A stretch of DNA of 64,000 nt from Haliotis cracherodii (GCF_022045235.1 NW_027266269.1:5394001-5458000), one strand, 5' to 3'; shown: positions 3,818 to 63,565, numbered from the stretch's first letter. Made by a program: numbers and translations. The notes: generated from the sequence alone by a model not told the origin.

Positions 3818-3852
3818 CTTATTTCATTCTTGGGATGTTTAGGAGTAGCCAT
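3818..3852 (-). CDS. Candidate first coding exon type B (MATPKHPKNEI-R); partner BTB exon would lie left of the window
   Basis: acaATGG Kozak, 35 nt, ends AG|gtaaca (phase 2). Confidence 0.6.
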
Positions 3853-3990
3853 TGTCACCAGGAAGTTACTGCACCGTGATTGTATGATGATAATAATTGT
3901 CAGGTGACGAGACCACAGCGAACACGGTAACTTGATGAGCAAAACCCTTGTTTCACTTTCGATTTGACACTTCTGAGAAGCAGTAGACCT

Positions 3991-4004
3991 AAGGGAGGTA
4001 ACTC
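3991..4004 (-). promoter_or_regulatory. Recurrent GAGTTACCTCCCTT motif upstream of first exons
   Basis: Exact or variant copies sit about 110-205 bp upstream of type A, B and C ATGs. Confidence 0.4.
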
Positions 4005-4267
4005 GCTTGGTTTTTCTTTCTTACAAATTGAGATTGAAATATCAATACTTAAGCTGTAATGGGTCGGATGGTTAGGGTCGTGTGGGTTCGAACCTGACGT
4101 CGTTAAAACGTGTCCTGATTTCTTTTTCCGTGTGACAGAATTTACTTGACAATTATATGTCTCCTGATTCATTTGGACTTTAGGTATACTGATTTATTTA
4201 TTTGGTATTTGTGAGTGAGACAGAATTTACCTGGTACTTCCTCGTGTCCTGTTGTATTTGGTATTTG

Positions 4268-4517
4268 GGTTGGTTTGTTGGCTGGTTTGTTGTTTAACGC
4301 CGCACTCAGCAATATTCCAGCTATATGACGGCGGTCTGTAATCCAGTGATTGACATCATGAGCATCGATCCACGTGCTTTGGATTGATGCCATGGATCAA
4401 CCAAGTTCGCGAGCCTCACCACCCGATCCCGTTAGTCGCCTCTTACGACAAGCGTAGTCGCCTTTTACGGCAGGCATGGGTTGCTGAAGACCTATTCTAC
4501 CCCGAATTTTCGAGGGC
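4268..4517 (-). mobile_element. SINE-like family 2 (~260 bp, no tRNA head)
   Basis: Matches 22172-22426; GTCGTAAGAGGCGAC core and 3' tail shared with family 1. Confidence 0.7.
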
Positions 4518-4720
4518 CTGGTATTTGGGAGTGAGACAGAATTTACCAAGCACTTCCACGTGTCCTGATTTATTTGGTATTTGGGTTGGTTTGTTGGTTC
4601 GCTTGTTGTTTAACGCCGCACTCAGCAATATTCCAGCTATATGATGGCGGTCTGTAAATAATCAAGCCTGGACCAGACAATCCAGTGATTAATGTCATGA
4701 GCATCGATTCACGCACTTGC

Positions 4721-6030
4721 AACAGTGCCAGTTGACCTCTCCCAATGCGAGCTGACCAGTGCTTGATGACACACTAACCAGCTTTCACAGTGCCAGTTGA
4801 CCTCTCCCAGTGCTTGCTGACCAGTGCTTGATGAGATACTAACCAGCTCTCACAGTGCCAGTTGACCTCTCCCAATGCGAGCTGACCAGTGCTTGATGAC
4901 ACACTAACCTGCTCTCACAGTGCCAGTTGACCTCTCCCAGTGCGAGCTGACCAGTGCTTGATGACACACTAACCTGCTCTCACAGTGCCAGTTGACCTCT
5001 CCCAATGCGAGCTGACCAGTGCTTGATGACACACTAACCAGCTCTCACAGTGCCAGTTGACCTCTCCCTTTGCGAGCTGACCAGTGCATGATGACACACT
5101 AACCAGCTCTCACAGTGCCAGTTGACCTCTCCCAGTGCGAGCTGACCAGTGCTTAATGACACACTAACCTGCTCTCACAGTGCCAGTTGATCTCTCCCAG
5201 TGCGAGCTGACCAGTGCTTGATGACACACTAACCTGCTCTCACAGTGCCAGTTGACCTCTCCCAGTGCGAGCTGACCAGTGCTTGATGACACACTAACCA
5301 TCTCTCACAGTGCCAGTTGACCTCTCCCAATGCGAGCTGACCAGTGCTTGATGACACACTAACCATCTCTCACAGTGCCAGTTGACCTCTCCCAATGCGA
5401 GCTGACCAGTTGTTGATGACACACTAACCTCATCTCACAGCGCCAGTTGACCTCTCCCAGTGCTTGATGACACACAAACCTACTCTCACAGTGCCAGTTG
5501 ACCTCTCCCAAGGTGTGTTGACCAGTGCTTGATGACACACTAACCTGCTCTCACAGTGCCAGTTGACCTCTCCTAGTGCGAGCTGACCAGTGCTTGATGA
5601 CACACTAACCATCTCTCACAGTGCCAGTTGACCTCTCCCAATGTGTGTTGACCAGTGCTTGATGACGCACCAACCTGCTCTCACAGTGCCAGTTGACCTC
5701 TCCCAGTGTGAGCTGACCAGTGCTTGATGTCACACTAACCAGCTGTCACAGTGCCAGTTGACCTCTCCCAATGCGAGCTGACCAGTGGTTGATGACACAC
5801 TTACCAGCTCTCACAGTGCCAGTTGACGTCTCCCAGTGCGAGCTGACCAGTGCTTGATGACACACTAACCAGCTGTCACAGTGCCAGTTGACCTCTCCCA
5901 ATGTGAGCTGACCAGTGGTTGATGACACACACAAATCTGCTCTCACTACAGTGCCAATTGACCTCTCCAAATGCGAACTGACCAGTGCTTGATGACACAC
6001 ACGTATCGGCCCTAGCCACAGTACCAGTTG
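4721..6030. repeat. 65-bp minisatellite, about 20 units
   Basis: Unit cacagtgccagttgacctctcccaatgcgagctgaccagtgcttgatgacacactaaccatctct; unit starts at 4786, 4851, 4916. Confidence 0.95.
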
Positions 6031-6059
6031 ACATAGTAACCTCATCACAGAACAACTTA

Positions 6060-6850
6060 CTGGCACTCGTCTGTTATTCATGAAGAGGACGTAAAACTAT
6101 TATAAAACACGTTTTGAAATAAAGGGAATATTTATTTTAGCAAAAGATCGCATACAAAACGTCTAAACAGTGTGAGGACATATCAGAAATGTTCAGAATT
6201 CTAAATCTACACAGCTTTTGTAATCTTACGTCGTCTATAAATACACACACTTTGTCAATAACGGCAACACAACACAGGTATGTTGATGGAAAACAAAAAG
6301 GTCACATGTCATTTGGGTATAACAAATCCCTGGAAAAAAGTCCATATAAGATGTACCAATTGTCACTCAAAATCAGATAGCAGGTGACCGATTCTCACTT
6401 CGGTTCATCTGACAGGAAACAGTGGCACTGTGAATCCTCATAAATCACAATCATATTATTTTTTATCTTCTCACACTTATCAGAGAAAAAAGGATGGGCG
6501 TTGGAATAGCCGCGTTGCTCGTTACACTGAAGTCCGAGGATTGTTGTTTAACGCCGCACTCAGCAATATTCCAGCTATATGACGGCGGTCTGTAAATAAT
6601 CGAGTCTGGACCAGACAATCCAGTGATTCACATCATGAGCATCGATCCACGTAATTAGGATCGATGACATGCATCAACCAAGTCAGCGAGACTGACCACA
6701 CGATCCCGTTAGTTGCCTCTTACGACAAGCATAGTCGCCTTTTTGGTTGCTGAAGACCTATTTTACCCCGGATCCTCAGGGGTCTCACGCGGACGTATAC
6801 ACTGGAGTCTCGGGTACTCACCTTCTCTTCAGGGATACATGAGTGGCCAT
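6060..6850 (-). pseudogene. BTB gene copy with the whole BTB exon deleted (3' flank and type C first exon retained)
   Basis: Collinear with 62200-63565, but about 650 bp containing the exon is missing at the junction at 6540. Confidence 0.75.
6822..6850 (-). CDS. Candidate first coding exon type C (MATHVSLKR-R), orphaned
   Basis: agaATGG, 29 nt, AG|gtgagt donor, phase 2. Confidence 0.5.
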
Positions 6851-9866: not shown

Positions 9867-10479
9867 CTATTTGCATATGTGTTGATGGGATGACTTAAAC
9901 ACTTCCTCAATGAACTGTAAACGCTTCTCGAATAGTTTTTTCAAAGCCGCAGATGAAATATTCACATAGTCTACATGGGCTGCTACATAAAATTCATATT
10001 GTTTTGTTTTATTCATGGCATATTGTGACGCTATGTCTGTTGTTTTCTCCAACAAGTTGTCCAATCCATACTTATCAGCCAGATATAAGAAGTGTACTAT
10101 GTCATCCCTGGATATGCGATACGCCTCTACTTTCAGTTTATAGCGATCACAGCGGTCAAGAAGAAACTCCTCACAGCAACGTTTCAAGCCATCCATTTGG
10201 TACTCGTCAGCCATTTCCAGCAGTCTGTCCACCGTGTCCTCAGTAACAGGTCGGAGTTCTGATGGGTAAATACAGAGAAGCAGATCCACAATGTCATCAT
10301 ACGACTTTTCTGGAAGAGGAATTTCACCCCCTTGCTTTTCTTTAAAGTCCCCATTAAACATTTTGTCAAAGACATTCGACGCCGATGCTAGGATCGTTTT
10401 GTTGACGTGGAGATGTCTGCCCTCTACAACCAGAACAACGTCAGACTTGTCGGAGGGTTCGTCAAACACAGATGTGTTC
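9867..10479 (-). CDS. BTB/POZ-domain protein (BTB + BACK-like helices), terminal coding exon, subfamily I
   Basis: SDVVLVVEGRHLHVNKTILASASNVFDKMFNGDFKE..LADEYQMDGLKRCCEEFL. Acceptor ttcttttctgtcag|G in phase 2; joins 18367-18401 in frame. Confidence 0.9.
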
Positions 10480-27161: not shown

Positions 27162-28138
27162 TGTTACCAGGTAGTTACTGCACCGTGATTGCATGATGAT
27201 AATAATTGTCAGGTGACGAGGCCACAGCGAACACGGTAACTCGATGAGCAAAACCCTTGTTTCACTTTCGATTTGACAATTCTGAGAAGTAGACCTAAGG
27301 GAGGTAACTCGCTTGGTTCTTCTTTCTTACAAATTGAGATTGAAATATCAATACTTAAGCTGTAATGGGTCGGATGGTTAGGGTCGTGTGGGTTCGAGCC
27401 TGACGTCGTTAAAACGTGTCCTGATTTCTTTTTCCGTGTGACAGAATTTACTTGACAATTATATGTCTCCTGATTTATTTGGACTTTAGGTATACTGATT
27501 TATTTATTTGTTATTTGTGAGTGAGACAGAATTTACCTGGTACTTCCTCGTGTCCTGATGTATTTGGTATTTGGGTTGGTTTGTTGGCTGGTTTGTTGTT
27601 TAACGCCGCACTCAGCAATATTCCAGCTATATGACGGCGGTCTGTAATCCAGTGATTGACATCATGAGCATCGATCCACGTACTTGGGATTGATGCCATG
27701 CATCAACCAAGTTCGCGAGCCTGACCACCCGATCCCGTCAGTCGCCTCTTACGACAAGCGTAGTCGCCTTTTACGGCAAGTATGGGTTGCTGAAGACCTA
27801 TTCTACCCCGAATTTTCGAGGGCCTGGTATTTGGGGTTGAGACAGAATTTACCTTGCACTTCCACGTATCCTGATTTATTTGGTATTTGGGAGTGAGACA
27901 GAATTTACCAAGCACTCCCAATTTTACTGATTTATTTGGTATTAGGGAGTGAGACAGAATTTACCAAGCACTTCCACGTGTCCTGATTTATTTGGTATTT
28001 GGGTTGGTTTGTTGGTTCGCTTGTTGTTTAACGCCGCACTCAGCAATATTCCAGCTATATGACGGCGGTCTGTAAATAATCAAGCCTAGACCAGACAATC
28101 CAGTGATTAATGTCATGAGCATCGATCAACGCACTTGC

Positions 28139-30170
28139 CACAGTGCCAGTTGACCTCTCCCAATGCGAGCTGACCAGTGCTTGATGAGATACTAACCAGC
28201 TCTCACAGTGCCAGTTGACCTCTCCCAGTGCGAGCTGACCAGTGCTTGATGACACACTAACCAGCTTTTAGAGTGCCAGTTGACCTCTCCCAGTGCGAGC
28301 TGACCAGTGCTTGATGACACACTAACCAGCTTTTAGAGTGCCAGTTGACCTCTCCCAGTGCGAGCTGACCAGTGCTTGATGACACACAAACTATCTCTCA
28401 CAGTGCCAGTTGACCTCTCCCAGTGCGAGCTGACCAGTGCTTGATGACACACTAACCATCTCTCACAGTGCCAGTTGACCTCTCCCAGTGCAAGCTGACC
28501 AGTGCTTGATGACACACAAACCATCTCTCACAGTGCCAGTTGACCTCTCCCAGTGCGAGCTGACCAGTGCTTGATGACACACTAACCATCTCTCACAGTG
28601 CCAGTTGACCTCTCCCAATGCGAGCTGACCAGTGCTTGATGACACACTAACCTGCTCTCACAGCGCCAGTTGACCTCTCCCAGTGGTTGATGACACACTA
28701 ACCTATTCTCACAGTGCCAGTTGACCTCTCCCAAGGTGTGTTGACCAGTGCTTGATGACACACTAACCTACTCTCACAGTGCCAGTTGACCTCGCCCAAT
28801 GTGAGCTGACCAGTGCTTGATGACGCACCAACCAGCTCTCACAGTGCCAGTTGACCTCTCCCAGTGCGAGCTGACCAGTGCTTGATGACACACTAACCAT
28901 CTCTCACAGTGCCAGTTGACCTCTCCCAGTGCGAGCTGACCAGTGCTTGATGACACACTAACTATCTCTCACAGTGCCAGTTGACCTCTCCCAATGCGAG
29001 CTGACCAGTGCTTGATGACACACTAACCATCTCTCACAGTGCCAGTTGACCTCTCCCAATGCGAGCTGACCAGTGGTTGATGAAACACTAACCATCTCTC
29101 ACAGTGCCAGTTGACCTCTCCCAATGCGAGCTGACCAGTGGTTGATGACACACTAACCTGCTCTCACAGCGCCAGTTGTCCTCTCCCAGTGCTTGATGAC
29201 ACACTAACATATTCTCAAAGTGTCAGTTGACCTCTCCCAAGGTGTGTTGACCAGTGCTTGATGACACACTAACCTGCTCTCACAGTGCCAGTTGACCTCT
29301 CCCAGTGTGAGCTGACCAGTGCTTGATGACACACAAACCATCTCTCACAGTGCCAGTTGACCTCTCCCAGTGCGAGCTGACCAGTGCTTGATGACACACT
29401 AACCATCTCTCACAGTGCCAGTTGACCTCTCCCCGTGCAAGCTGACCAGTGCTTGATGACACACTAACCATCTCTCACAGTGCCAGTTGACCTCTCCCAA
29501 TGCGAGCTGACCAGTGGTTGATGACACACTAACCTGCTCTCACAGCGCCAGTTGACCTCTCCCTATGCGAACTGACCAGTGCTTGATGACACACACATGA
29601 ACAACTAACTGGCACTCATCTGTTATTCATGAAGAGGGCGTAAAACTATTATCAAACACGTTTTCAAATAAAGGGAATATTTATTTTAGCAAAAGACCGC
29701 ATACAAATCGTCTAAACAGTTTGAGGACATATCAGAAATGTTCAGAATTCTAAATCTACACAGCTTTTGTAATCTTACGTTGTTTTTAAATACACACACT
29801 TTGTCAATAACGGCAACACAACACAGGTATGTTGATGGAAAACAAAAAAGTCACATGTCATTTGGGTATAACAAATCCCTGGAAAAAAGTCCATATAAGA
29901 CCTCTCCCAATGCGAGCTGACCAGTGCTTGATGACACACTAACCATCTCTCACGGAGCCAGTTGACCTCTCCCAGTGCGAGCTGACCAGTGGTTGATGAC
30001 ACCCTAACCAGCTGTTACAGTGCCAATTGACCTCTCCAAATGCGAGCTGACCAGTGGTTGATGACACACACAAATCTGCTCTCACCACAGTGCCAGTTGA
30101 CCTGTCCAAATGCGAACTGACCAGTGCTTGATGACACACACTTATCGGCCCTAGCCACAGTACCAGTTGA
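28139..30170. repeat. 65-bp minisatellite, interrupted by a duplicated ~300-bp flank (29598-29898)
   Basis: Same unit as 4721-6030. Confidence 0.9.
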
Positions 30171-30812
30171 CATAGTAACCTTATCACAGAACAACTAACT
30201 GGCACTGAACGGAACCTCTTTGAAAAACGACTGAAGTCTCTGAAAGTTCTTCAGCACTCATCTGTTATGCATGAAGAGGACGTAAAACTATTATCAAACA
30301 CGTTTTCAAATAAAGGGAATATTTATTTTAGCAAAAGATCGCATACAAATCGTCTAAACAGTGTGAGGACATATCAGAAATGTTCAGAATTCTAAATCTA
30401 CACAGCTTTTGTAATCTTACGTCGTCTATAAATACACACACTTTGTCAATAACGGCAACACAACACAGGTATGTTGATGGAAAACAAAAAAGTCACATGT
30501 CATTTGGGTATAACAAATCCCTGGAAAAAAGTCCATATAAGATGTACCAATTATCACTCAAGATCAGATAGCAGGGGACCTATTCTCACTTCGGTTCATC
30601 TGACAGGAAACAGTGGCACTCTGAATCCTCATAAATCACAATCATAATATTTTTTATCTTCTCACACATATCAGAGAAAAAAGGAGGGGCCGTTTTGTTA
30701 AGGCGTTGCTCGTTATACTGAAGTCCGAGGATGTACTGCCCACATGCCTACAGTGCAGGCCATTTCTGGTCCCCCGCCATGGGTCCGCTGAAAATCAACT
30801 CAATATCCCATT

Positions 30813-31386
30813 TTAGTGTTTTCTTTTTTCTAGGTAATCTACTCGCTTACGAAGAAGTTTAGCAAGGCCTCTCGATGAAAGTTTCGTATAGTCTTCATGG
30901 TTCGCTATTGAGAAGCCATATCTAATCTGATTTATTGAAACGTTAGATAACGTGTCTGTTGCTATCTCTAACAAAGTTTCCAATTCATACTTATCGGCCA
31001 GGTATAAGAAGTGCACTGTGTCGTTACAGTCATGTACATGTTCATATATAGACGTTTTACATAGTGGCAATAGAAACTCCTCACACCTCCTCTTCAGGCC
31101 AACAATCTGGTACTCGTCAGCCAGTTCCAGCAGTTTGTCCACAGTTTCCCTGGTGACAGGCCTGAGTTCTGATGGGTAAATACATAGCAGCATGTCCACA
31201 ATGTCATCACGAGATTTGCCTGGAAGTGGAATTTCAGCCTGCTGCTGTTCTTTAAAGTCGCCATTAAGCATGCGGTCAAAGACATCTGACGCCGTTGACA
31301 GAATCGCTTTATTGACGTAGAGACGTCTTCCCTCCACCACAATCGCAACATCAGATTTAGCTGTGGGTTTATCAAAGACTGATGGC
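30813..31386 (-). CDS. BTB/POZ-domain protein terminal exon, subfamily III
   Basis: Frame extends upstream of the ORF call (PSVFDKPTAKSDVAIVVEG) to acceptor tttcgtattcgttgcag|G, phase 2. Confidence 0.9.
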
Positions 31387-31633
31387 CTGCAACGAATACG
31401 AAATTATCAGATGACGTCATGACTGTTTATTTACACCCACTAATCCAGGCTGGTTATTCTCTGGCTTTGACGCTGGTTTTAGTCCAGCTATATGACGGCA
31501 GTCTGTAAATAATCAAGTCTGGACCTGACAATCCAGTGATTTACATCATGATCATCGATCCACGCAATTGGGATCGATGACATTTATCAACCAAGTCGGA
31601 CCTATACACTGGAGTATGGGCTCGGGTACTCAC

Positions 31634-31662
31634 CTTCTCTTTGGGGATACATGAGTGGCCAT
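31634..31662 (-). CDS. Candidate first exon type C (MATHVSPKR-R)
   Basis: aaaATGG, 29 nt, AG|gtgagt; 247-bp intron to 31386. Confidence 0.7.
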
Positions 31663-31903
31663 TTTCAGCTTGCAGTAGAATTGGCTTCCACACGGACAAG
31701 AAAGGAGATCTTGATCGGAAAGCACACCCGCTAGTGCTTTTAGTTTCGATTTCAACAATAGACAAACATTAATAGGCGGTAACTCGCATGCCAGGTTCTC
31801 GCGTTTCCATTCAACAACTCGTTTATTTATAGGATGCACTATTGATTACACATGAAAGTATAAAACGACTATTGGTGTGTGAATGTGGCCACTTCGCGCT
31901 TAA

Positions 31904-34140: not shown

Positions 34141-34175
34141 CTTATTTCATTCTTGGGATGTTTAGGAGTAGCCAT
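34141..34175 (-). CDS. Candidate first exon type B (MATPKHPKNEI-R)
   Basis: 35 nt, AG|gtaaca, phase 2. Confidence 0.6.
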
Positions 34176-34816: not shown

Positions 34817-35050
34817 GGTATTTGGGAGTGAGACATAATTTACCTGGCACTTCCACGAGTCCTGGTTTATTTGGAATTTGGGCGTGAGACAGAATTTATC
34901 TGGCACTTCCAAATTTCCTGGTTTATTTGGTATTTGGGAGTGAGACATAATTTACCTGGCACTTCCACGAGTCCTGGTTTATTTGGAATTTGGGAGTGAG
35001 ACAGAATTTACCCAACACTTCCACGTGTACTGAATTATTTGGTATTTGGG
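34817..35050. repeat. ~56-bp tandem repeat (tttgggagtgagacagaatttacctggcacttccac..)
   Basis: About 4 units; variable copy number at 27825-28000 and 61170-61400. Confidence 0.8.
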
Positions 35051-35179
35051 TTGGTTAGTTGGTTCGCTTGTTGTTTAACGCCGCACTCAGCAATATTCCA
35101 GCTATATGACGGCGGTCATAATCAAGCCTGGACCAGACAATCCAGTAATTAATGTCACAAGCATCGAGCCACGCACTTG

Positions 35180-35725
35180 CCACAGTGCAACATGACCTCT
35201 CCCAATGCGAGCTGACCAGTGCTTGATGACACACACTAACCATCTCTCACAGTGCCAGTTGACCTCTCCCAATGCGAGCTGACCAGTGCTTGATGACACA
35301 CTAATCATCTCTCACAGCGCCAGTTGACCTCTCCCAGTGCGAGCTGACCAGTGCTTGATGACACACCAACCAGCTCTCACTGTGCCAGTTGACCTCCCCA
35401 ATGCGAGCTGACCAGTGCTTGATGACACAAGTCAATCTGCTCTCACAGCGCCAGTTGACCTCGCCCAGTACGAGCTGACCAGTGCTTGATGACACACTAA
35501 CCATCTCTCACAGTGCCAGTTGACCTCTCCCAGTGCGAGCTGACCAGTGCTTGATGATACACTTACAAGCTCTCACAGTGCCAGTTGACCTCTACCAATG
35601 CGAGCTGACCAGTGCTTGATGACACACTTACAAGCTCTCACAGTGCCAATTGACCTCTCCCTGTGCGAGCTGACCAGTGCTTGATGACACACACTTATCG
35701 GCTCTAGCCACAGTGCCAGTTGACA
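35180..35725. repeat. 65-bp minisatellite, about 8 units
   Basis: Same unit as 4721-6030. Confidence 0.9.
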
Positions 35726-36250
35726 ATGTAACCTCATCACAGGACAACTAACTGGCACTCATCTGTTATTCATGAAGAGGACGTAAAAGTATTATCAAAC
35801 ACGTTTTCAAATAAAGGGAATATTTATTTTAGCATAAGATCGCATACAAATCGTCTAAACAGTGTGAGGACATATCAGAAATGTTCAGAATTGTTACGTC
35901 GTCTATAAATACACACACTTTGTCAATAACGGCAACACAACACAGGTATATTGATGGAAAACAAAAAAGTCACATGTCATTTGGGTATAACAAATCCCTG
36001 GAAAAAAATTCATATAAGATGTACCTATTGTCACTCAAGATCAGATAGCAGGGGACCTATTCTCATTTCGGTTCATCTAACAGGAAACAGTGGCACTGTG
36101 AATCCTCATAAATCACAGTCATATTATTTTTTATCTTCTCACACATATCAGAGAAAAAAGGATGGGTGTTGTTAAGGCGTTGCTCGTTATACTGAAGTCC
36201 GAGGATGTATTGCCACATGCCTACAGTGAAAATCAGCTCAATATCCCATT

Positions 36251-36824
36251 TTATTTTTTTATTTTTTCAAGGAAATCTACTCGCTTACGAAGTAGCTTAG
36301 CAAGGCTTCTCGATAAAAGTTTCGTATAGTCTTCATGGTTCGCTATTGAGAAGCTACGTCCTATCTGATTAATTGAAACGTTAGATAACGTGTCTGTTGC
36401 TATCTCTAACAAAGTTTTCAATTCATACTTATCGGCCAGGTATAAGAAGTGCACTGTGTCGTTATAGTCATGTACATATGGATATACAGATGTTTTACAT
36501 AATGGCAATAGAAACTCCTCACACCTCCTCTTCAGGCCAACAATCTGGTACTCGTCAGCCAGTTCCAGCAGTTTGTCCACCGTTACCCTGGTGACAGGCC
36601 TGAGTTCTGATGGGTAAATACATAGCAGCATGTCCACAATGTCATCACGAGATTTGCCTGGAAGTGGAATTTCAGCCTGCTGCTGTTCTTTAAAGTCGCC
36701 ATTAAGCATGCGGTCAAAGACATCTGACGCCGTTGACAGAATCGCTTTATTGACGTAGAGACGTCTTCCCTCCACCACAATCGCAACATCAGATTTAGCT
36801 GTGGGTTTATCAAAGACTGATGGC
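36251..36824 (-). CDS. BTB/POZ-domain protein terminal exon, subfamily III
   Basis: Intact frame; same phase-2 acceptor as 31386. Confidence 0.9.
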
Positions 36825-39578: not shown

Positions 39579-39613
39579 CTTATTTCATTCTTGGGATGTT
39601 TAGGAGTAGCCAT
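39579..39613 (-). CDS. Candidate first exon type B
   Basis: 35 nt, AG|gtaaca. Confidence 0.6.
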
Positions 39614-41493: not shown

Positions 41494-42064
41494 TTACTTT
41501 CTTTCAAGGTAATCTACTCGCTTACGAAGTAGCTTAGCAAGGCTTCTCGATGAAAGTTTTGTATAGTATTCATGCTCAGCTATTGGGTAGCCATGTAGTC
41601 CACGGTGATTAATTGAAGCGTCAGATAACTTTTCTGTTGCTATCTCTAACAAAGTTTCCAATTCATACTTATCAGCCAGGTATAAGAAGTGCACCATGTC
41701 CTTATATTTTTCTACACCATACAACCTATCAATTTTACATAATGACAACAGAAACTCCTCACACCTTCTCTTCAGGCCAACAATCTGGTACTCGTCAGCC
41801 AGTTCCAGCAATTTGTCCACAGTTTCCATGGAGATAGGCCTGAGGTCTGATGGGTAAATACATAGCAGCATGTCCACAATGTCATCGCGAGATTTGCCTG
41901 GAAGTGGAATTTCAGTCTGCTGCTGTTCTTTAAAGTCGCCATTAAGCATGCGGTCAAAGACATCTGACGCAGTTGACAGAATCGCTTTATTGACGTAGAG
42001 ATGGCTTCCCTCCACCACAATCGCAACATCAGATTTAGCTGTGGGTTTATCAAAGACTGATGGC
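41494..42064 (-). CDS. BTB/POZ-domain protein terminal exon, subfamily III (divergent C-terminal half)
   Basis: Intact frame; acceptor tttcttattcgttgcag|G. Confidence 0.9.
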
Positions 42065-42739: not shown

Positions 42740-42768
42740 CTTCTCTTCAGGAATACACGGTTGGCCAT
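42740..42768 (-). CDS. Candidate first exon type C (MANRVFLKR-R), tandem duplicate
   Basis: 29 nt, AG|gtgagt. Confidence 0.6.
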
Positions 42769-49356: not shown

Positions 49357-49921
49357 TCACTTTTGAAAGTGGTAAATCATTTCAGCCATCAGCTTGATCT
49401 TGGTTTCATTCCTAAGATTCACAAAGTCCTGTTTGTTCTCCAGATACATGGTATTCTTCGGGTTATACGCTGGACATCTAAATTGGTAGTATTTCACAAT
49501 TTGTATTGCACCATGCAGGAGATCAGGCAAGCTGTGCTTATCTGCAAGATATAAAGCGTGAAGAACCTCTCTTTGTGAAATATATTTGTCAACACAGCGT
49601 GTTAACAGAAACCCCTCACACTTCCGCTTCAAGACATCAATCTGGTACTCGTCAGCCAGTTCCAGCAGTCTGTCCACCGTTGCCTTGGTGACAGGCCGGA
49701 GTTCTGATGGGTAAATACAGAGAAGCAAGTCCACAATGTCATCATATGTTTTTCCCGGTAGAGGGACTTCACTTTCCTGCTTTTCTTTAAAATCTCCATT
49801 AAACATCCTGTGAAAAACATCCGATGCTACTGAAAGTGCCCCTTTGTTGACGTGAAGACGTCTCCCTTCTACAACCAGAGCGACATCAGTCTTGTCAGAG
49901 GGTTCGTCAAACACAGATGAC
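49357..49921 (-). CDS. BTB/POZ-domain protein terminal exon, subfamily II
   Basis: Intact BTB; acceptor tcttctatgctggcag|G; stop earlier than in the 24616 copy. Confidence 0.88.
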
Positions 49922-53347: not shown

Positions 53348-53921
53348 TTAGACCGACAACACTGATTGAAAGCAGTCAATCATTTCAGCCATCAGCTTAA
53401 ACTTGGTTTCATTCCCAAGATTCACAAAGTCCTGTTCCTCCTCAAGATAAATGTCAAACGCATAACCATCTGGGTTTCTCAATCTGAACGATTTCGCAAT
53501 TTGTATTGCAGCATTCAGGAGTTTAGGCATGCTGTGCTTATCTGCCAGATATAAAGCGTGAAGAACCTCTCCTTGTAAAGTAGATTCGTCACGACAGAGT
53601 GTTAACAGAAACTCCTCACACTTCCGCTTCAAGCCATCCATCTGGTACTCGTCAGCCAGTTCCAGCAGTCTGTCCACCGTTACCTTGGTGACAGGCCCGA
53701 GTTCTGATGGGTAAATACAGAGAAGCAAGTCCACAATGTCATCATATGTTTTTCCCGGTAGAGGGACTTCACTTTCCTGCTTTTCTTTAAAATCTCCATT
53801 AAACATCCTGTGAAAAACATCCGATGCTGCTGAAAGTGCCCCTTTGATGACGTGAAGACGTCTCCCTTCTACAACCAGAGCGACATCAGTCTTGTCAGAG
53901 GGTTCGTCAAACACAGATGAC
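53348..53921 (-). CDS. BTB/POZ-domain protein terminal exon, subfamily II
   Basis: Intact BTB; phase-2 acceptor; last residues frameshifted relative to the 24616 copy. Confidence 0.88.
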
Positions 53922-55263
53922 CTGCCAGCATAGAAGATCAAGTCAATGGGTCACTTTACATCAGACAAAACAAGATCGTTACAATACTTTCCCCGTCATT
54001 ACACTTGTGTTTCATATCTTGACATTGTCATAACAACGTAAGTTACGTCATTACATTTCGCTCGGTCAGATACCATAGAAAGTCAACTCGTTTCGTAAAA
54101 ATGGTATCTAACGAGAGTGTGTGCTGAATTCCCTATTTATCTTTCAAAGTTCGTGTAATGGCTACCATGTTGGACAAATTATAAGTTAAGGAAGGTTTTT
54201 GTTTGTTTGTTTGTTCGTTTTATCATTTAACTCCGCGATCGGCAATGTTCCAGCTATGTGACGGCGGTCTGTAAATAATCGAGTCTGGACCAGACAATCC
54301 AGTGATTGACATTATACGCACCGATCCACGCAATTAGGGTATGATGACATGCATCAACCATGTCAGCGAGCCTGACCACCCGATCCCGTCTGTCGCCTCT
54401 TACTACAAACTTAGTCGCCATTTACAGCAAGCATGGGTTACTGAAGACCTTCTCATCCCGGATCTTCAGAGGTCTTAAGGAAGGTAAGTCCGAGTAATCT
54501 ACTAAAACACAGCGCATCACAGAACCACTATGGTAAGGGATATTATATATGATGTCATCTCGTGTTTCCTACAGTGCAAAGTGGGGCGGTCGGGTAGCCC
54601 AGTGGTTAAAGCATTCGCTTGTCACGCCGAAGACCCGGGTTCGATTCCCGACATGGGTACAATGTGTGAAGCCCGTTTCTGGTGTACCCCGGCCGTGATA
54701 TTGCTGGAATATTGCTAAAAGTCGCGTAAAATCAAACTCACTCACTACAGTGCAAAGTAAGGAGAAGATTGATATAGAAATGCTGTTATAATATGGCATC
54801 AGCGCTCGATTCCAACATGTGTACAATGCTAAGAACGGCCACTAGTTCGCAATGAAAGTCATTGGTTACCGAGTTGTATAAAAAGGAGATATGTTAACAT
54901 TTTGTTTGCCAAATATGGGGCGGTCGCGAAATTTCTGATTTTAACTCCAGAAATGCGACTAAATCTGAATTTTTCCGAAATAATTACACCACAACTCTAG
55001 ATTTTTGTAGGCTTTCAGACAAATGTTATCCTATTATCGGTCTCAAATCATCGATCAACGCAATTGGGATCGATGACATTTATCAACCAAGTCAGCGAGA
55101 CTGACCACACGATCCCGTTAGTTGCCTCTTACGACAAGCATAGTCGCCTTTTTGGTTGCTAAAGACCTATTCTATCCCAGATATCCACGGGTCTCACGCG
55201 GACGTATACACTGGAGTATGGGCTCTGGGTCCCTGTTCCCCGTTCCCCGTCTCAGGTACTCAC

Positions 55264-55292
55264 CTTCTCTTTGGGGATACACGAGTGGCCAT
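55264..55292 (-). CDS. Candidate first exon type C (MATRVSPKR-R)
   Basis: 29 nt, AG|gtgagt; the upstream motif region is replaced. Confidence 0.5.
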
Positions 55293-55722
55293 TTTCAGCT
55301 TGCAGTAGAATTGGCTATCACACGGACAAGAAACGAGATCTTGATCGGAAAGCCCAGTAGTCACATATGGTAAAAAAAACATATGAGGGAAAAAGGTAAC
55401 TTATCCGTGACTTCATTCATACAACACACAACTACCAGTTTGTTGGTATTCAGACAACTTCATTTTGGTTGAAATGTCAGTCAGTAAGGTCACGCGGACG
55501 TTGGTTGGTTGGTTTGTTGTTTAACGCCGCACTCAGCAATAGTCCAGCTTTATGACGGCGGTCCTTAAATAATCAAGTCTTGACCTGACAATCCAGTGAT
55601 TTACATAATGATCATCGATCCACGCAGTTGGGATCGATGACATTTATCAAAGTCACGCGGACCTATACACTGGAGTATGGGCTCTGGGTCCCTGTTTCCC
55701 GTTCCCCGTCTCAGGTACTCAC

Positions 55723-55751
55723 CTTCTCTTTGGGGATACAGGAGTGGCCAT
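55723..55751 (-). CDS. Candidate first exon type C (MATPVSPKR-R)
   Basis: 29 nt, AG|gtgagt. Confidence 0.55.
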
Positions 55752-58217
55752 TTTCAGCTTGCAGTAGAATTGGCTATCACACGGACAAGAAACGAGATCT
55801 TGATCGGAAAGCACACCCGCTAGTGTTTTCAGTTTCGATTTCAACAATAGACAAACAGTAATGGGCGTTAACTCGCATGTCAGGTTCTCGCGTTTCCAGT
55901 CAACAACTCGTTTATTTATAGGATGCACTATTGATTACACATGAACGCATAAAACGACTATTGGTGTCTGAATGTTGCCACTTCGCGCTTAAGTGAAATG
56001 TTTGCTGGTCTGTTGCCATAGGAGGTATTCCTCGTCTGTCCGCGTCGATTCAACCGCGAAATCGTGGCGATGTATATACCGCCACTGTCTATTACGTATT
56101 ATTGTAAAGGCGAGTATATTTGAGTGTTGAGTGTGACATGACTGCTTGTACATAATTGAGACTTGACCAGGTAAACAAGCAATTGACATTTCAAGAAACG
56201 ATTCCCGCCTTCAGGGTACGATGGCACGCATAAAAGGTTGTTTTGTTGTTTAACGCCGCACTCAGCATGCTTAAATATTAAAATGGTCATACTAAATTAT
56301 TGATTTATGTTTAAAATTCCTTCATAATGTTATTGTGATGAATACACATAACGTGTGTACTATCTCCTATGACTGTCCGTCCAAGGAAGGAATAGACAGC
56401 ATTGCCACTGTAAACCGTTTGTTTTGTTTGTTTGTTTGTTTGTTGTTTAACGCCACACTCAGCAATATTCAGCGAGCCTGACCACCCAATCCCGTCAGTC
56501 GCCTCTTACGACAAGCATAGTCGCCTTTTACAGCAAGCATGGGTTGCTGGAGAGTGGAGACCTATTCTATCCCGGATCTTCATGGTACCACAGTTAACTG
56601 AATATGTGCGAAACATTCATTGTAGAAATTCTATAAAACCGAAAACCACCCTCGTCTTGTCCGTTTTCTTTATTAAATTGTTAATAGAAGATAAGCTGAG
56701 TTGAATTGCTTACCAAATATACATTTCTTTCAAAAGGATATGTCAAAATAAAGAGGTGCAATATTGTTTCAACAGGAAAACAGGCAACAGGGTTGCTGTA
56801 TCGCCTACATTAATAAGAGTGAGTGAGTATGGTTTTACGCCGCTTTTAGCAATGTTCCAGCAATATCACGGCTGGGGGACACCAGAAATGGGCTTCACAC
56901 ACTGTACATTAATAAGAGTTTTCTGTCATGTTTGAAGTAGTTCCCGTTGTTTGTTGTTTAATGCCCCTCTCAGTAATATGACAGCTGTTTGTGAATAATC
57001 GAGTCTGGACCAGACAATCCAGTGATAGACAACATGAGCATTGATATGTAGGACAGAAGTAGGATGAATATAAAAATAAAGCATTGGACTTTAAAACAGA
57101 TACTAGTGAGTGAGTTTGGTTTTACGCCACTTTTAGCAGTATTCCAGCAATATCACGGCGGGGGACACCAGAAATGGGTTACCCGACCGCCCCAAAACAG
57201 ATACTAACATCTCATTTAGTAACATATGGTTTTTTTTATTGAACACTGCTGAAAGCAATAATGTTTTGGTTATGCGTATATACTCTGATTACAGCCCAAT
57301 CGGGGGAGACCCGTGAAGATTCAGGGGTAGAATAGGTCTTCAACAACCTATGCTTGTCGTAAAAGGTGACTATGCTTGTCGTAAAAGGCGACTAACAGGA
57401 TCCGGTTGTCAGGCTCGCTGACTTGGTTGATGCATGTCATCAATCCCAATCATCTCGTATTTCCTACAGTACAAAGTGGGGCGGTCGGGTAGCCTAGTGG
57501 TTAAAGCATTGGCTCATCACGCCGAAGATCCGGGTTCGATTCCCGACATGGGTACAATGTGTGAAGCCCATTTCTGGTGTCCCCGGCCGTGATATTGCTG
57601 GAATATTGCTAAAAGCGGTGTAAAATCAAACTCACTCACTACAGTGCAAAGTAAGGAGAAGGTATATGGATGAACAACTTTTTTATTGCAATCAGGAACG
57701 ACGTTTCGGTGTAGGTTCTAACACTGTCATCAAACTAGTACAGAGTATGGCTGACAAGTATTTATACAGGTAGGAGGCGGTGTTTATACAGTAGAGTAGA
57801 TTTAAGATGTAGATGTAGATGTAACCATGGTTACACTGGAGCGGATTATATTTGTCTTCTGCTTTAGATTTGAGTATTGATCATGACTACATTTATTTTT
57901 TTATATTATGTTATGCCGTGTAAACATGAATTATGATCTGTATGATCTGTGACTAAACACACTTATGATAATGTAAATATGATTAATGTACTACTTACAT
58001 TGTGTATTTAAAGAAATCGTCATATAAAAATAAAAATCCATTATATGAAATACTTGTATTATGAAATTATCATTTGCTTTGTAATGCAAAGAAACGTCAT
58101 TTCATTTGATTGTCGCTGGTCGTAAGGGAAGTAACTCTAGCCCCGGATAATATGTTATATTGTTTACGTGGTTACCAGGATGGTAAGTTGCAAATGTCTG
58201 CGGTACCGGTAAGTTAA

Positions 58218-60281: not shown

Positions 60282-60472
60282 TTAACAGAGGGGTGTCGGC
60301 CTGTCGGGTTATATCATTTCCATGCCAGTGACGCTCAGTGGTTTATGTTATGTCAGTCTTGAAAAACATGCGGGAATTGAAGCAAAAGCAAGCACACACA
60401 TAACATTCTACGCAGATATTGATTCGAGTTTCCCGATTTACAATTTCCAGTTTCAAATATACTGATTGTTAC

Positions 60473-60507
60473 CTTATTTCATTCTTGGGATGTTTAGGAG
60501 TAGCCAT
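60473..60507 (-). CDS. Candidate first exon type B
   Basis: 35 nt, AG|gtaaca. Confidence 0.6.
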
Positions 60508-61533
60508 TGTCACCAGGTAGTTACTGCACCGTGATTGTATGATGATAATAATTGTCAGGTGACGAGGCCACAGCTAACACGGTAACTTGATGAGCAAAAC
60601 CCTTGTTTCACTCTCGATTTGACACTTCTGAGAAGTAGACCTAAGGGAGGTAACTCGCTTGGTTCTTCTTTCTTACAAATTGAGATTGAAATATCAATAC
60701 TTAAGCTGTAATGGGTCGGATGGTTAGGGTCGTGTGGGTTCGAACCTGACGTCGTTAAAACGTGTCCTGATTTCTTTTTCCGTGTGACAGAATTTACTTG
60801 ACAATTATGTGTCCCCTGATTTATTTGGACTTTAGGTATACTGATTTATTTATTTGGTATTTGTGAGTGAGACAGAATTTACCTGGTACTTCCTCGTGTC
60901 CTGATGTATTTGGTATTTGGGTTGGTTTGTTGGCTGGTTTGTTGTTTAACGCCGCACTCGGCAATATTCCAGCTATATGACGGCGGTCTTTAATCCAGTG
61001 ATTGACATCATGAGCATCAATCCACGTACTTGGGATAATGCCATGCATCAACCAAGTTTGCGAGCCCGACCACCCGATCCCGTTAATCGCCTCTTACGAC
61101 AAGCGTAGTCGCCTTTTACGGCAAGTATGGGTTGCTGAAGACCTATTCTACCCCGAATTTTCGAGGGCCTGGTATTTGGGAGTGAGACAGAATTTACCTG
61201 GCACTTCCACGAGTCCTGGTTTATTTGGAATTTGGGAGTGAGACAGAATTTATCTGGCACTTCCAAGTTTCCTGGTTTATTTGGTATTTGGGAGTGAGAC
61301 AGAATTTACCTGGCACTTCTACGAGTCCTGGTTTATTTGGAATTTGGGAGTGAGACAGAATTTTCACAACACTTCCACGTGTCCTGAATTATTTGGAATT
61401 TGGGTTGGTTAGTTGGTTCGCTTGTTGTTTAACGCCGCACTCAGCAATATTCCAGCTATATGACGGCGGTCATAATCAAGCCTGGACCAGACAATCCAGT
61501 GATTAATGTCACGAGGATCGATTCACGCACTTG

Positions 61534-62200
61534 CCACAGTGCCAGTTGACCTCTCCCAATGCGAGCTGACCAGTGCTTGATGACACACACTAACCATCTC
61601 TCACAGTGCCAGTTGACCTCTCCCAATGCGAGCTGACCAGTGCTTGATGACACACTAACCATCTCTCACAGTGCCAGTTGACCTCTCCCAATGCGAGCTG
61701 ACCAGTTGTTGATGACACACTAACCTCATCTCACAGCGCCAGTTGACCTCTCCCAATGCGAGCTGACCAGTGCTTGATGACACACTAACCAGCTCTCACA
61801 GTGCCAGTTGACCTCTCCCAATGCGAGCTGACCAGTGGTTGATGACACACGTCAATCTGCTCTCACAGCGCCAGTTGACCTCTCCCAGTACGAGCTGACC
61901 AGTGCTTGATGACACACTAACAAGCTCTCACAGTGCCAGTTGACCTCTCCCAGTGCGAGCTGACTAGTGCTTGATGATACACTTACAAGCTCTCACAGTG
62001 CCAGTTGACCTACCCCAATGCGAATCGACCAGTGGTTGATGACACACGTCAATCTGCTCTCACAGCGCCAGTTGACCTCGCCCAGAGCGAGCTGACTAGT
62101 GGTTGATGACACACTAACCATCTCTCACAGTGCCAGTTGATCTCTCCCAGTGCGAGCTGACCAGTGCTTGATGACACACACGTATCGGCTCTAGCCACAG
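61534..62200. repeat. 65-bp minisatellite, about 10 units
   Basis: Same unit as 4721-6030. Confidence 0.9.
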
Positions 62201-62667
62201 TGTTATTCATGAAGAGGACGTAAAAGTATTATCAAACACGTTTTCAAATAAAGGGAATATTTATTTTAGCATAAGATCGCATACAAATCGTCTAAACAGT
62301 GTGAGGACATAAATATAAATACACACACTTTGTCAATAACGGCAACACAACATGATGGAAAACAAAAACGTCAAATGTCATTTGGGTATAACAAATCCCT
62401 GGAAAAAAATCCATAGAAGATGTACCTATTGTCACTCAAGATCAGATAGCAGGGGACCTATTCTCACTTCGGTTCATCTAACAGGAAACAGTGGCACTGT
62501 GAATCCTCATAAATCACAATCATATTATTTTTTATCTTCTCACACTTATCAGAGAAAAAAAGGATGGGCGTTGGGATAGCCGTGTTGTTAAGGCGTTACT
62601 CGTTATACTGAAGTCCGAGGATGTATTGCCCACATGCCTACAGTGAAAATCAGCTCAATATCCCATT

Positions 62668-63241
62668 TTAGTGTTTTATTTTTTCAAGGCAATCTATTCG
62701 CTTACGAAGTAGCTTAGCAAGGCTTCTCAATGAAAGTTTCGTATAGTCTTCATGGTTCGCTATTGAGAAGCCATATCTAATCTGATTTATTGAAACGTTA
62801 GATAACGTGTCTGTTGCTATCTCTAACAAAGTTTCCAATTCATACTTATCGGCCAGGTATAAGAAGTGCACTGTGTCGTTACAGTCATGTACATGTTCAT
62901 ATATAGACGTTTTACATAATGGCAATAGAAACTCCTCACACCTCCTCTTCAGGCCAACAATCTGGTACTCGTCAGCCAGTTCTAGCAGTTTGTCCACAGT
63001 TTCCCTGGTGACAGGCCTGAGTTCTGATGGGTAAATACATAGCAGCATGTCCACAATGTCATCGCGAGATTTGCCTGGAAGTGGAATTTCAGCCTGCTGC
63101 TGTTCTTTGAAGTAGCCATTAAGCATGCAGTCAAAGTCATCTGACGCCATTGACAGAATCAGTTTATTGACGTAGAGACGTCTTCCCTCCACCACAATCG
63201 CAACATCAGATTTAGCTGTGGGTTTATCAAAGACTGATGGC
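62668..63241 (-). CDS. BTB/POZ-domain protein terminal exon, subfamily III
   Basis: Open frame, phase-2 acceptor; several substitutions in the otherwise conserved BTB core. Confidence 0.85.
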
Positions 63242-63536
63242 CTGCAACGAATACGAAATTATCAGATGACGCATGTTTAACGCCGCACTCAGCAATATTC
63301 CAGTCTGTAAATAATCGAGTCTGGACCAGACAATCCAGTGATTTACATCATGAGCATCGATCCACGCAATTAGGATCGATGACATGCATCAACCAAGTCA
63401 GCGAGATTGACCACCCAGTCCCGTTAGTTGCCTCTTACGACAAGCATAGTCGCCTTTTTGATTGCTGAAAACCTATTCTATCCTGGATCTTCACGGGTCT
63501 CACGCGGACGTATACACTTGAGTCTCGGGTACTCAC

Positions 63537-63565
63537 CTTCTCTTCAGGGATACATGAGTGGCCAT
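63537..63565 (-). CDS. Candidate first exon type C (MATHVSLKR-R)
   Basis: 29 nt, AG|gtgagt. Confidence 0.65.

What the first reader, a model, noticed from the sequence alone, without database searches (positions are those of the whole stretch)
3818..63565. Plug-and-play locus: 15 interchangeable ATG micro-exons and 8 BTB terminal exons, all phase 2
Seen: every BTB exon starts (Y)nCAG|G with one orphan G. Fifteen 29/35-nt units of three sequence types lie on the same strand: A at 18367 and 51367; B at 3818, 27127, 34141, 39579 and 60473; C at 6822, 31634, 37072, 42312, 42740, 55264, 55723 and 63537. All start ANNATGG, are stop-free and end AG|GT, rebuilding an AGG (Arg) codon. Leader type is not tied to BTB subfamily: the nearest leaders of the three subfamily II exons are B, A and C. 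Four BTB exons have 2-3 leaders before the next gene. Inference: a promoter/leader-cassette system that allows alternative first-exon choice, possibly splicing across BTB exons, and evolutionary rewiring of expression without frame disruption. The ORF track misses all of this.
Basis: partly seen in the sequence, partly recalled or inferred. Interest (0 to 1): 0.8.

Follow-up and report, generated by a model that had tools for sequence, protein, structure and literature searches.

The report
Abalone BTB gene array, swapped first exons
The window holds half of a black-abalone tandem array of small two-exon BTB genes whose short first exons, each with its own promoter, have been duplicated, orphaned and swapped between gene copies, so that some genes have two or three alternative starts; it is a tidy but ordinary kind of gene-family evolution that public gene models already largely show.

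Summary
All 15 micro-exons and all 8 BTB exons lie where stated, on the minus strand, with the stated Kozak, phase and splice features.

The window is Haliotis cracherodii, G000:C6:5394001-5458000. It is half of a ~120-kb array with 16 intact and one truncated BTB exon and 28 leaders. The B and C leader types occur nowhere else in the 1.18-Gb genome.

Each leader is the coding end of a promoter-plus-first-exon module. The A, B and C modules are diverged homologues that share an IRF/ISRE-like motif, so the uniform phase is inherited.

RefSeq proteins already join leaders to BTB exons. One gene has isoforms X1 (B leader) and X2 (C leader). Transcript-like contigs add a C start to a gene that RefSeq starts at B. 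This is my inference from depths.

Extra leaders arose from a BTB-exon deletion, short duplications and a SINE-bounded block. Module swapping is supported. Splicing across BTB exons is not.

The scan had already described the other half of this array (s1-823190, s1-823343).

Verdict: ordinary tandem family with alternative promoters.

The parts
3818..3852 (-). B leader (coding part of first exon, MATPKHPKNEI + AG of Arg); next BTB exon lies outside the window at C6:5392795
   Evidence: not needed by any RefSeq protein seen
6822..6850 (-). C leader, orphaned: its own BTB exon was removed by a ~650-bp deletion
6541..6545 (-). deletion scar. Homology to the 63537/63241 gene runs 7100-6545 = 63815-63274 and resumes at 6541 = 62622, so the whole BTB exon is missing
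9867..10479 (-). BTB terminal exon, class I (203 codons)
   Evidence: equals the C-terminal part of RefSeq XP_071098053 (P0019)
13131..18260 (.). 54/55-bp minisatellite filling most of the 7.9-kb intron between A 18367 and BTB 10479
18367..18401 (-). A leader (MASDTSSVAIE+R), first coding exon of the class I gene
24616..25243 (-). BTB terminal exon, class II, long tail (208 codons)
   Evidence: P0009
27127..27161 (-). B' leader (MATPKHAKDEI+R); this copy has an extra in-frame upstream ATG that RefSeq uses
30813..31386 (-). BTB terminal exon, class III. Contig pieces of three runs end at 31385, next to the predicted acceptor
   Evidence: P0001
31634..31718 (-). C first exon: 29-nt coding part 31634-31662 plus about 55 nt of 5'UTR; the 5' end at about 31717/31718 is inferred
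   Evidence: (depth arithmetic, my inference)
31744..31753 (-). ISRE/IRF-like GAAATCGAAA about 26 nt upstream of the inferred start. Equivalent motifs lie at 3951, 6932, 18475, 27260, 37182, 39712, 42850, 55827/55833 and 63647
34141..34175 (-). B leader; RefSeq joins it to BTB 31386, skipping C 31634
36251..36824 (-). BTB terminal exon, class III
   Evidence: P0018
37072..37100 (-). C leader 248 nt upstream of BTB 36824; not used in RefSeq proteins
39579..39613 (-). B leader; RefSeq joins it to BTB 36824
41494..42064 (-). BTB terminal exon, class III
   Evidence: P0004
42312..42340 (-). proximal C leader (MATHVFLKR+R); its IRF-like motif is mutated; unused by RefSeq here, but the equivalent copy is used in the paralogue at C6:5350857
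42740..42768 (-). distal C leader (MANRVFLKR+R) of a 428-bp tandem duplicate; RefSeq joins it to BTB 42064
49357..49921 (-). BTB terminal exon, class II
   Evidence: P0012
51367..51401 (-). A2 leader (MALVIISAAIK+R)
53348..53921 (-). BTB terminal exon, class II, with two annotated alternative first exons
   Evidence: P0021 = X1, P0022 = X2
54509..54769 (.). tRNA-like SINE copy plus the flank that lies on the acceptor side of the single SINE in the 27127-25243 intron
55264..55292 (-). proximal C leader inside a 163-nt duplicate (55194-55356) that begins near the inferred start and lacks the promoter; used in RefSeq isoform X2
55723..55751 (-). distal C leader with full promoter; unused by RefSeq here, but the equivalent copy is used in the paralogue at C6:5383057
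57450..57701 (.). second copy of the same SINE plus the flank on the leader side. Together with 54509-54769 it brackets the 2.7-kb block that carries both C leaders
60473..60507 (-). B leader, 6.5 kb upstream of BTB 53921; used in RefSeq isoform X1
62668..63241 (-). BTB terminal exon, class III
   Evidence: P0017
63537..63565 (-). C leader 296 nt upstream of BTB 63241

Best explanation
This is a lineage-restricted tandem array of small two-exon genes for BTB-only proteins of about 190-230 aa, with a cullin-3-adaptor-type BTB and no MATH or Kelch domain.

Each 'micro-exon' is the coding tail of an ordinary first exon driven by its own promoter. The A, A2, B and C promoter-plus-exon-1 modules are diverged copies of one ancestral module. 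That is why all share ATGGC, an AAG|GT donor and the same intron phase.

How it works (inferred):
1. Transcription starts at whichever promoter fires.
2. The leader's donor pairs with the first acceptor downstream. That is always a BTB terminal exon, because intervening leaders have no acceptor.
3. The transcript ends at that exon's poly(A) site.
4. Promoter choice alone therefore fixes the product. Isoforms differ only in the first 10-12 residues and in regulation.

Genes with two or three leaders arose as by-products of array turnover:
- deletion of a BTB exon, leaving a solo leader;
- short duplications of a leader;
- recombination inside introns, partly at SINE copies, which also moved the C module between deeply diverged BTB classes.

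The shared GAAANNGAAA motif just upstream of the inferred start suggests IRF-type, immune-inducible control. This last point is inferred and untested.
For: Identity and extent:
- 100% hits to H. cracherodii RefSeq proteins.
- The array holds 16 intact and 1 truncated BTB exon and 28 leaders, all on the minus strand, at C6:5346246-5467150.
- B and C patterns occur nowhere else in the genome.

Gene models:
- 15 of 15 H. cracherodii RefSeq proteins equal an exact BTB-exon translation plus an N-part. That N-part matches a leader lying between that exon and the previous BTB exon.
- X1 and X2 of one gene differ only by B versus C leader.

RNA-like contigs:
- Pieces end at 31385 in X1, X2 and X4.
- Their unplaced 5' parts (85 and 44 nt) account exactly for the depth in the bin holding C 31634: 9.22x85/200 = 3.92 and 144.6x44/200 = 31.8, both as observed.
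- X4 and X8 give 84 nt.

Homologous modules: alignment of A, A2, B and C shows shared blocks.

Motif:
- 28 minus-strand and 0 plus-strand hits in 144 kb, 22 of them within 250 nt upstream of a leader ATG against about 1.4 expected.
- 15 hits in the window against 3.55 expected, reached by 0 of 100 shuffles.

Origins of extra leaders:
- deletion scar at 6541-6545;
- 163-nt and 329-nt leader duplicates;
- a SINE-bracketed 2.7-kb block.

Swapping:
- Class II and III BTB exons are about 0.7 changes per site apart.
- C modules next to either class differ by about 0.01-0.05.
- Class II genes share the last ~850-1130 nt of intron whatever the leader.

Protein: the BTB is closest to KLHL22, SPOP and KLHL11 among solved structures.
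Against: - No run is on record as RNA, and the tool only guesses 'RNA?'. The runs are coded organisms that may be sister species.
- The C 31634 to 31386 junction was not printed. I deduced it from bin depths, because high-copy repeats swamped the joint table.
- RefSeq XP models are computed predictions, and I could not see their read support.
- B leaders are identical in five copies, so a junction read cannot say which B copy it came from.
- X4's contig carries 76 further letters that I could not place.
- The inferred start is based on contig ends, which can also be assembly break points.
- IRF control rests on a motif recalled from vertebrate ISREs. The copies share ancestry, so the enrichment is not independent across copies.
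Confidence: 0.8

Rival explanations
1. A dedicated combinatorial system. Leaders splice over one or more BTB terminal exons to several downstream BTB exons, by read-through or trans-splicing. Any promoter could then drive any BTB protein across the array.
For: - All donors and acceptors share one phase, so any pairing would be in frame.
- In the sister species H. rubra, RefSeq isoforms P0013 and P0029 join an internal point of one BTB exon to the start of a second BTB exon.
- The corresponding in-frame AG|GTGTGAG is present in 7 of 7 class III exons here.
Against: - None of 16 RefSeq protein-exon pairs in H. cracherodii uses a leader from beyond the previous BTB exon.
- AATAAA or ATTAAA lies within 18-600 nt after 14 of 16 stops.
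- Bins 35210-35809, which lie between the 3' end of gene 36824 and the repeat block upstream of leader B 34141, have zero depth in 4 of 4 runs. Contigs do drop rare forms, though.
- The H. rubra forms run into a frameshifted exon and are predictions.
Confidence: 0.06
2. An ordinary array with one working first exon per gene. The extra leaders would be inert relics. The alternative starts in RefSeq would be artefacts of multi-mapping reads among near-identical leader copies or of model building.
For: - One extra leader (C 6822) is demonstrably a relic of a deleted gene.
- C 55264 lacks its promoter and C 42312 has a mutated motif.
- 6 of 15 window leaders are not needed by any RefSeq protein.
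- B leaders are identical, so mapping is ambiguous.
Against: - A B leader joined to a class III exon (P0001, P0018) cannot be borrowed from another gene, because every class III exon has a C leader nearest to it.
- The contigs nevertheless fit C for the same exon, so two starts are indicated by two different sources.
- B-leader bins carry depth in 2 of 4 runs.
- All 28 leaders keep ATG, open frame and GT. With exons this short and copies this young, that is weak evidence.
Confidence: 0.13

Closest known systems
Clustered variable-first-exon loci (protocadherin alpha/gamma, UGT1A); recalled, not looked up here
   Same: Several promoter-plus-first-exon modules lie in tandem upstream of one acceptor. 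Promoter choice decides the splice, and intervening first exons are skipped because they lack acceptors.
   Different: - Here there are only 2-3 leaders per acceptor.
- The leaders encode 10-12 residues, not the diversity-bearing domain.
- The downstream exon is itself multiplied 17 times, each with its own poly(A) signal.
- The layout looks like a by-product of deletions and duplications.
Chimeric genes from unequal crossing-over in tandem families (haemoglobin Lepore, red/green opsin, CYP11B1/B2); recalled
   Same: Recombination inside a shared intron puts the promoter and 5' exon of one paralogue in front of the 3' exon of another. Phase is kept because the intron position is ancestral.
   Different: Here it has happened repeatedly within one array and leaves supernumerary first exons. 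Part of it is bracketed by SINE copies.
Expanded, fast-evolving BTB adaptor families (C. elegans bath genes, grass MATH-BTB). The CUL3-adaptor role and the grass expansion come from the abstracts of PMC4091423 and PMC6883508 (listing). The nematode adaptive-evolution paper is recalled only.
   Same: Tandem, lineage-specific expansion of cullin-3-type BTB proteins. RefSeq names these 'BTB and MATH domain-containing protein 36/38-like'.
   Different: No MATH or other substrate-binding domain: Pfam finds only BTB plus sub-threshold BACK-like hits. No selection test was done here.
Drosophila mod(mdg4)/lola-type loci; recalled
   Same: BTB genes with many alternative exons arranged in tandem and joined in one phase.
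   Different: There, the BTB sits in common 5' exons joined to many alternative 3' exons, partly in trans. Here the BTB is the 3' terminal exon, and no crossing of terminal exons is seen.
ISRE/IRF-driven immune genes. Oyster IRF2 and IRF8 activate mammalian ISRE and IFN-beta reporters (PMC5557890, passages read).
   Same: GAAANNGAAA(C/G)T-like elements sit just upstream of the inferred start in all leader types.
   Different: No expression or binding data for these genes. The consensus is recalled from vertebrates.

Membership tests
BTB/POZ domain proteins (Pfam PF00651) | Significant match to the BTB profile above the gathering score | tested here: met
   4 of 4 exons tested (of 8 in the window): 79.8-98 bits against a cut-off of 20.5
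MATH-BTB / SPOP-type CUL3 substrate adaptors | A substrate-binding MATH domain N-terminal to the BTB | tested here: not met
   No MATH hit in Pfam. RefSeq proteins are 193-231 aa with only a 10-23 aa N-part before the BTB.
MATH-BTB / SPOP-type CUL3 substrate adaptors | BACK/3-box helical extension after the BTB | tested here: inconclusive
   PF24570 BACK_BPM_SPOP at 17-19.8 bits, below its 27.4 cut-off. Matches to solved SPOP and KLHL structures cover residues about 23-125.
MATH-BTB / SPOP-type CUL3 substrate adaptors | Binding to cullin-3 | not testable with these tools
   Needs pull-down or co-expression
Variable-first-exon cluster (Pcdh/UGT1A type) | Each first exon has its own promoter and lacks an acceptor | tested here: met
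   Conserved promoter blocks and motif upstream of 26 of 28 leaders. No AG at the inferred 5' end of the C exon. The start itself is inferred from contig ends.
Variable-first-exon cluster (Pcdh/UGT1A type) | Several first exons are joined to one shared downstream exon | tested here: met
   BTB 53921 is joined to B or C in RefSeq X1/X2. BTB 31386 is joined to B in RefSeq and to C in contigs, the latter inferred. That makes two genes only.
Variable-first-exon cluster (Pcdh/UGT1A type) | The variable exon carries the functional diversity (a whole domain) | tested here: not met
   Leaders encode 10-12 residues; the domain is in the downstream exon
Alternative 3'-exon / trans-splicing locus (mod(mdg4), lola type) | One 5' part joined to many different terminal exons along the locus | tested here: not met
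   0 of 16 RefSeq protein-exon pairs cross a BTB exon. Zero contig depth between a gene's end and the repeats upstream of the next leader in 4 of 4 runs.
IRF/ISRE-regulated genes | ISRE-type motif close to the start site | tested here: met
   19 of 28 leaders have an exact GAAANNGAAA at -83 (A), -108 (B) or -91 (C) from the ATG; others are one mismatch off
IRF/ISRE-regulated genes | Induction by viral or poly(I:C) challenge and IRF binding | not tested
   No labelled RNA runs were available. No paper was found for abalone BTB genes.

The most novel reading that the evidence does not exclude
The array is an IRF-inducible, fast-turning-over immune family in which promoter-leader modules act as movable units. 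SINE-mediated recombination in the shared intron keeps re-pairing promoters with BTB exons, so each BTB variant samples different induction programmes. The different N-terminal peptides (hydrophilic A, hydrophobic A2, basic C) would set protein stability or location. On read-through, the common phase also allows in-frame chimeras across BTB exons, as annotated in H. rubra.
Probability: 0.1. Interest if true: 0.6.

Novelty: new member of a known kind. Interest (0 to 1): 0.3.

Why it matters
The locus is a clean, datable example of how a tandem family rewires its regulation. Promoter-plus-first-exon modules get orphaned, duplicated and re-paired with coding exons without breaking the frame, and the scars can still be read: a 650-bp exon deletion and a SINE-bracketed block.

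If the IRF-like promoter motif proves functional, this BTB-only family would be a candidate inducible immune gene set in abalones, animals with serious viral and bacterial diseases. Leader-specific primers would give a direct readout of which promoter responds.

It does not open a new kind of mechanism. Public gene models already contain these exons and one pair of alternative starts.

Tried and rejected
- **Gene calls around the locus:** I used cluster members and protein sequences instead.
- **Direct junction counts:** the single read-laying run printed only 15 of 290 joints, all between high-copy repeats (31410-31609, 34410-35209). The leader-to-exon joints had to be deduced from depths. 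No run is on record as RNA.
- **Relic BTB fragments between B and C leaders:** I looked for these as a test of the 'deleted exon' origin of the 5438-bp B+C+BTB unit. tblastn at E<=1 found none, so the origin of that unit is unresolved. Only C 6822 has a proven deletion.
- **Faster evolution of leader peptides than of flanks:**
  - A against A2: 12 of 32 against 33 of 250 variable columns (p = 0.001).
  - B: the reverse, 2 of 32.
  - C: no difference, 8 of 26.
  - I dropped the two promoter-less C copies, 55264 and -9174, before the C count.
  - No general claim can be made.
- **Hammerhead or other structured RNAs (lead from s1-823285):** Rfam at gathering score gave only 8 weak tRNA-like hits, which are SINEs.
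- **B spliced into the C exon:** rejected by reading the sequence. There is no AG at the inferred 5' end of the C exon, and the only nearby AAG would give an in-frame TGA.
- **Literature:** no paper holds both 'Haliotis' and 'BTB and MATH domain-containing'. 'abalone, BTB, tandem, expansion' and 'abalone, herpesvirus, BTB' gave nothing relevant. These are the searches behind the statement that the array is not described in print. Supplementary files were not consulted.
- **Intron position in relatives:** distant relatives on other contigs were checked. The closest, L017, encodes its N-terminus contiguously with the BTB, so the intron is specific to this array.

Full report
**What is there.**
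- The 15 units are 35 nt (A, B) or 29 nt (C) from ATG to the last base before GT. All have A at -3 and G at +4, no stop, and end AAG|GT.
- The 8 BTB exons start (Y)nCAG|G and run open for 187-208 codons.
- Four of the eight were given to Pfam, and all four match BTB at E 1e-22 to 5e-28. They also give sub-threshold BACK-like hits and no MATH domain.
- One correction: the two 'A' units share promoter and 5'UTR but differ at 10 of 35 coding bases. I call the second A2.

**Where it is.**
- The best protein hits are 100% identical RefSeq proteins of Haliotis cracherodii.
- The window is G000:C6:5394001-5458000.
- It is about half of one array at C6:5346246-5467150, with 16 intact BTB exons, one N-terminally truncated pseudo-exon and 28 leaders (3 A, 2 A2, 8 B, 15 C). 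All are on the minus strand.
- Whole-genome pattern searches at up to 3 mismatches found 8 B and 10 C copies, all inside the array, with 0 hits for the reversed control. A and A2 were searched only in the 144 kb around the array.
- So the leaders are not dispersed repeats.
- Much of the array is recent segmental duplication at 90-99% identity, so the copies are not independent observations.

**Gene models.** I compared database proteins with each exon separately.
- All 15 H. cracherodii RefSeq proteins retrieved end with an exact BTB-exon translation. Each begins with an N-part that equals a leader lying between that exon and the previous BTB exon.
- They cover 15 of the 16 intact exons.
- XP_071098054 (isoform X1) and XP_071098055 (isoform X2) share exon 53921. 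They differ only in using B 60473 or C 55264.
- For 31386 and 36824, RefSeq uses the distal B and skips the C that lies 248 nt from the acceptor.
- For 42064 it uses the distal of two C copies.
- Nine of the 15 window leaders are used. B 3818, C 6822, C 31634, C 37072, C 42312 and C 55723 are not needed by any model.
- No model crosses a BTB exon (0 of 16 protein-exon pairs).
- I could not see the read support of these predicted models.

**Transcript-like contigs.** No run is on record as RNA. The 15 best small runs are guessed to be RNA and may come from sister species. I laid four of them on 30810-36809.
- The printed joints were all between high-copy repeats, so the result below is my inference.
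- Contig pieces of X1, X2 and X4 end at 31385, next to the acceptor. They leave 85, 44 and 160 letters of the record unplaced on the 5' side.
- The depth in the bin that holds C 31634 equals contig depth times those lengths. For X1, 9.22x85/200 = 3.92 (observed 3.92). For X2, 144.6x44/200 = 31.8 (observed 31.8).
- X4 and X8 both give 84 nt.
- The bins holding B 34141 are empty in X2 and X4 and weakly covered in X1 and X8.
- I read this as C 31634 spliced to 31386 in 4 of 4 runs, with a first exon of about 84-85 nt. RefSeq gives B for the same exon.
- Seventy-six letters of the X4 contig remain unplaced.
- Bins 35210-35809, between the 3' end of the upstream gene and the repeat block upstream of B 34141, are empty in 4 of 4 runs.

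**Leaders are promoter modules.**
- The sequence at the inferred 5' end of the C exon has no AG, so it is a start rather than an acceptor.
- A, A2, B and C with 170-200 nt of upstream sequence align. They share blocks: GCGAGTTACC in B and C, an (A/G)AAAnCGAAAnT block in all, ATGGC, and AAG|GT.
- GAAANNGAAA occurs 28 times on the minus strand and never on the plus strand in 144 kb. Of these, 22 lie within 250 nt upstream of a leader ATG, at -83 (A), -108 (B) and -91 (C), against about 1.4 expected.
- In the window there are 15 against 3.55 expected, reached by 0 of 100 shuffles.
- This resembles the vertebrate ISRE/IRF core, which I recall rather than looked up.
- Oyster IRFs activate ISRE reporters (PMC5557890, passages).
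- I saw the motif, before finding that an earlier follow-up (s1-823190) reports IRF-type motifs for the neighbouring half of the array.

**Where extra leaders come from.**
- C 6822 is a solo leader. Homology to the 63537/63241 gene runs through promoter, exon 1 and intron to 33 nt before the acceptor. It resumes 46 nt after the stop, so about 650 bp holding the whole BTB exon are gone.
- C 55264 lies in a 163-nt duplicate that starts near the inferred start site and lacks the promoter. C 42312 and C 42740 are a 329-nt duplicate.
- The intron from B' 27127 to BTB 25243 holds one copy of a ~164-nt tRNA-like SINE with both flanks.
- The intron from B 60473 to BTB 53921 holds the leader-side flank plus SINE at 57701-57450 and SINE plus acceptor-side flank at 54769-54509. 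These bracket the 2.7 kb that carry both C leaders.
- That is the signature of recombination between SINE copies, or of a SINE-bounded insertion.
- No BTB relic lies between B and C in the 5438-bp units, so the origin of those units is open.

**Swapping.**
- BTB exons form three classes: I (2), II (7), III (7). Classes II and III are about 0.7 changes per site apart.
- C modules next to class II and next to class III sit in one unresolved group with branches of about 0.01-0.05.
- Class II exons that differ by 0.002 have different nearest leaders: C at -10943 and B' at -47181.
- Class II genes share the last ~850-1130 nt of intron whatever the leader.
- In H. rufescens the long-tailed class II protein is C-led (P0007), whereas the similar exon here is B'-led. 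Orthology is not shown.
- Exchange of 5' modules, or their homogenisation by conversion, is therefore well supported.

**Splicing across BTB exons.**
- I found no support in this species.
- There is one lead. H. rubra isoforms P0013 and P0029 join an internal point of one BTB exon to the start of a second, frameshifted one. The matching in-frame AG|GTGTGAG is kept in 7 of 7 class III exons here and in 0 of 9 others.

**Mechanism and comparison.**
- Promoter choice fixes the product, because the only acceptors downstream are BTB terminal exons, and these are followed by poly(A) signals.
- The uniform phase is inherited. The closest out-paralogue (L017) has no intron there.
- The layout works like a miniature variable-first-exon cluster. 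It evolves like classic unequal-crossover chimeras, but it fails the defining feature that the variable exon carries the diversity.
- It is a new member of known kinds, and is largely present in public models. The scan has already noted it on the adjoining DNA (s1-823190, s1-823343) and noted a similar layout elsewhere in this genome (s1-829579).

**Limits.**
- Only one read-laying run was allowed, and its joint table was swamped by repeats.
- Supplementary files were not consulted.
- No selection test and no structure prediction were done.

Noticed in passing
window:13131-18260: A 5-kb array of 54/55-bp repeats fills most of the intron between leader A 18367 and BTB exon 10479. The copy of this gene just beyond the window end has a shorter intron (5.9 against 7.9 kb).
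   Followed up: no
window:4591-6046, 28009-29594, 34984-35724, 61338-62179: A 65-bp minisatellite lies a few hundred bases upstream of B-leader modules, between them and the preceding gene's 3' flank.
   Followed up: no
window:31410-31609, 34410-35209: Short repeats inside the C intron and upstream of B reach summed contig depths of about 1e5 in all four runs laid. They belong to very abundant, probably SINE-like, families and swamped the joint table.
   Followed up: partly
window:51367-51401 versus 18367-18401: A and A2 leaders differ at 10 of 35 coding bases (SDTSSVAIE against LVIISAAIK, hydrophilic to hydrophobic). Across the five array copies, 12 of 32 coding columns vary against 33 of 250 in the flanks (p = 0.001). 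B and C show no such excess.
   Followed up: partly
window:43258-44262 (-), 19750-20463 (-): There is an intact-looking Tc1/mariner-type transposase ORF (DDE_3, HTH_Tnp_Tc3_2) upstream of C 42740. A retroelement RNase H fragment lies in the spacer above A 18367.
   Followed up: partly
proteins P0013, P0029 (H. rubra); window class III exons at codon 100: RefSeq isoforms of a sister species splice from inside one BTB exon into the next BTB exon. The same in-frame AG|GTGTGAG is kept in all 7 class III exons of this array.
   Followed up: partly
L027, about C6:5357386-5357987: An N-terminally truncated BTB class II pseudo-exon, 91% identical to exon 25243 from residue 41, sits downstream of a B' and an A leader in the other half of the array.
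   Followed up: partly
window:30810-36809, run X4 record 18: This contig is 100% identical to exon 31386 over 197 nt. It carries 160 letters 5' of the acceptor, of which only about 84 fit the C exon. The other 76 are unplaced.
   Followed up: no
Only two H. rufescens proteins (class I with A, class II with C) and no class III protein were found, against 15 in H. cracherodii. Either the array is much larger in black abalone or the red abalone annotation is incomplete.
   Followed up: no
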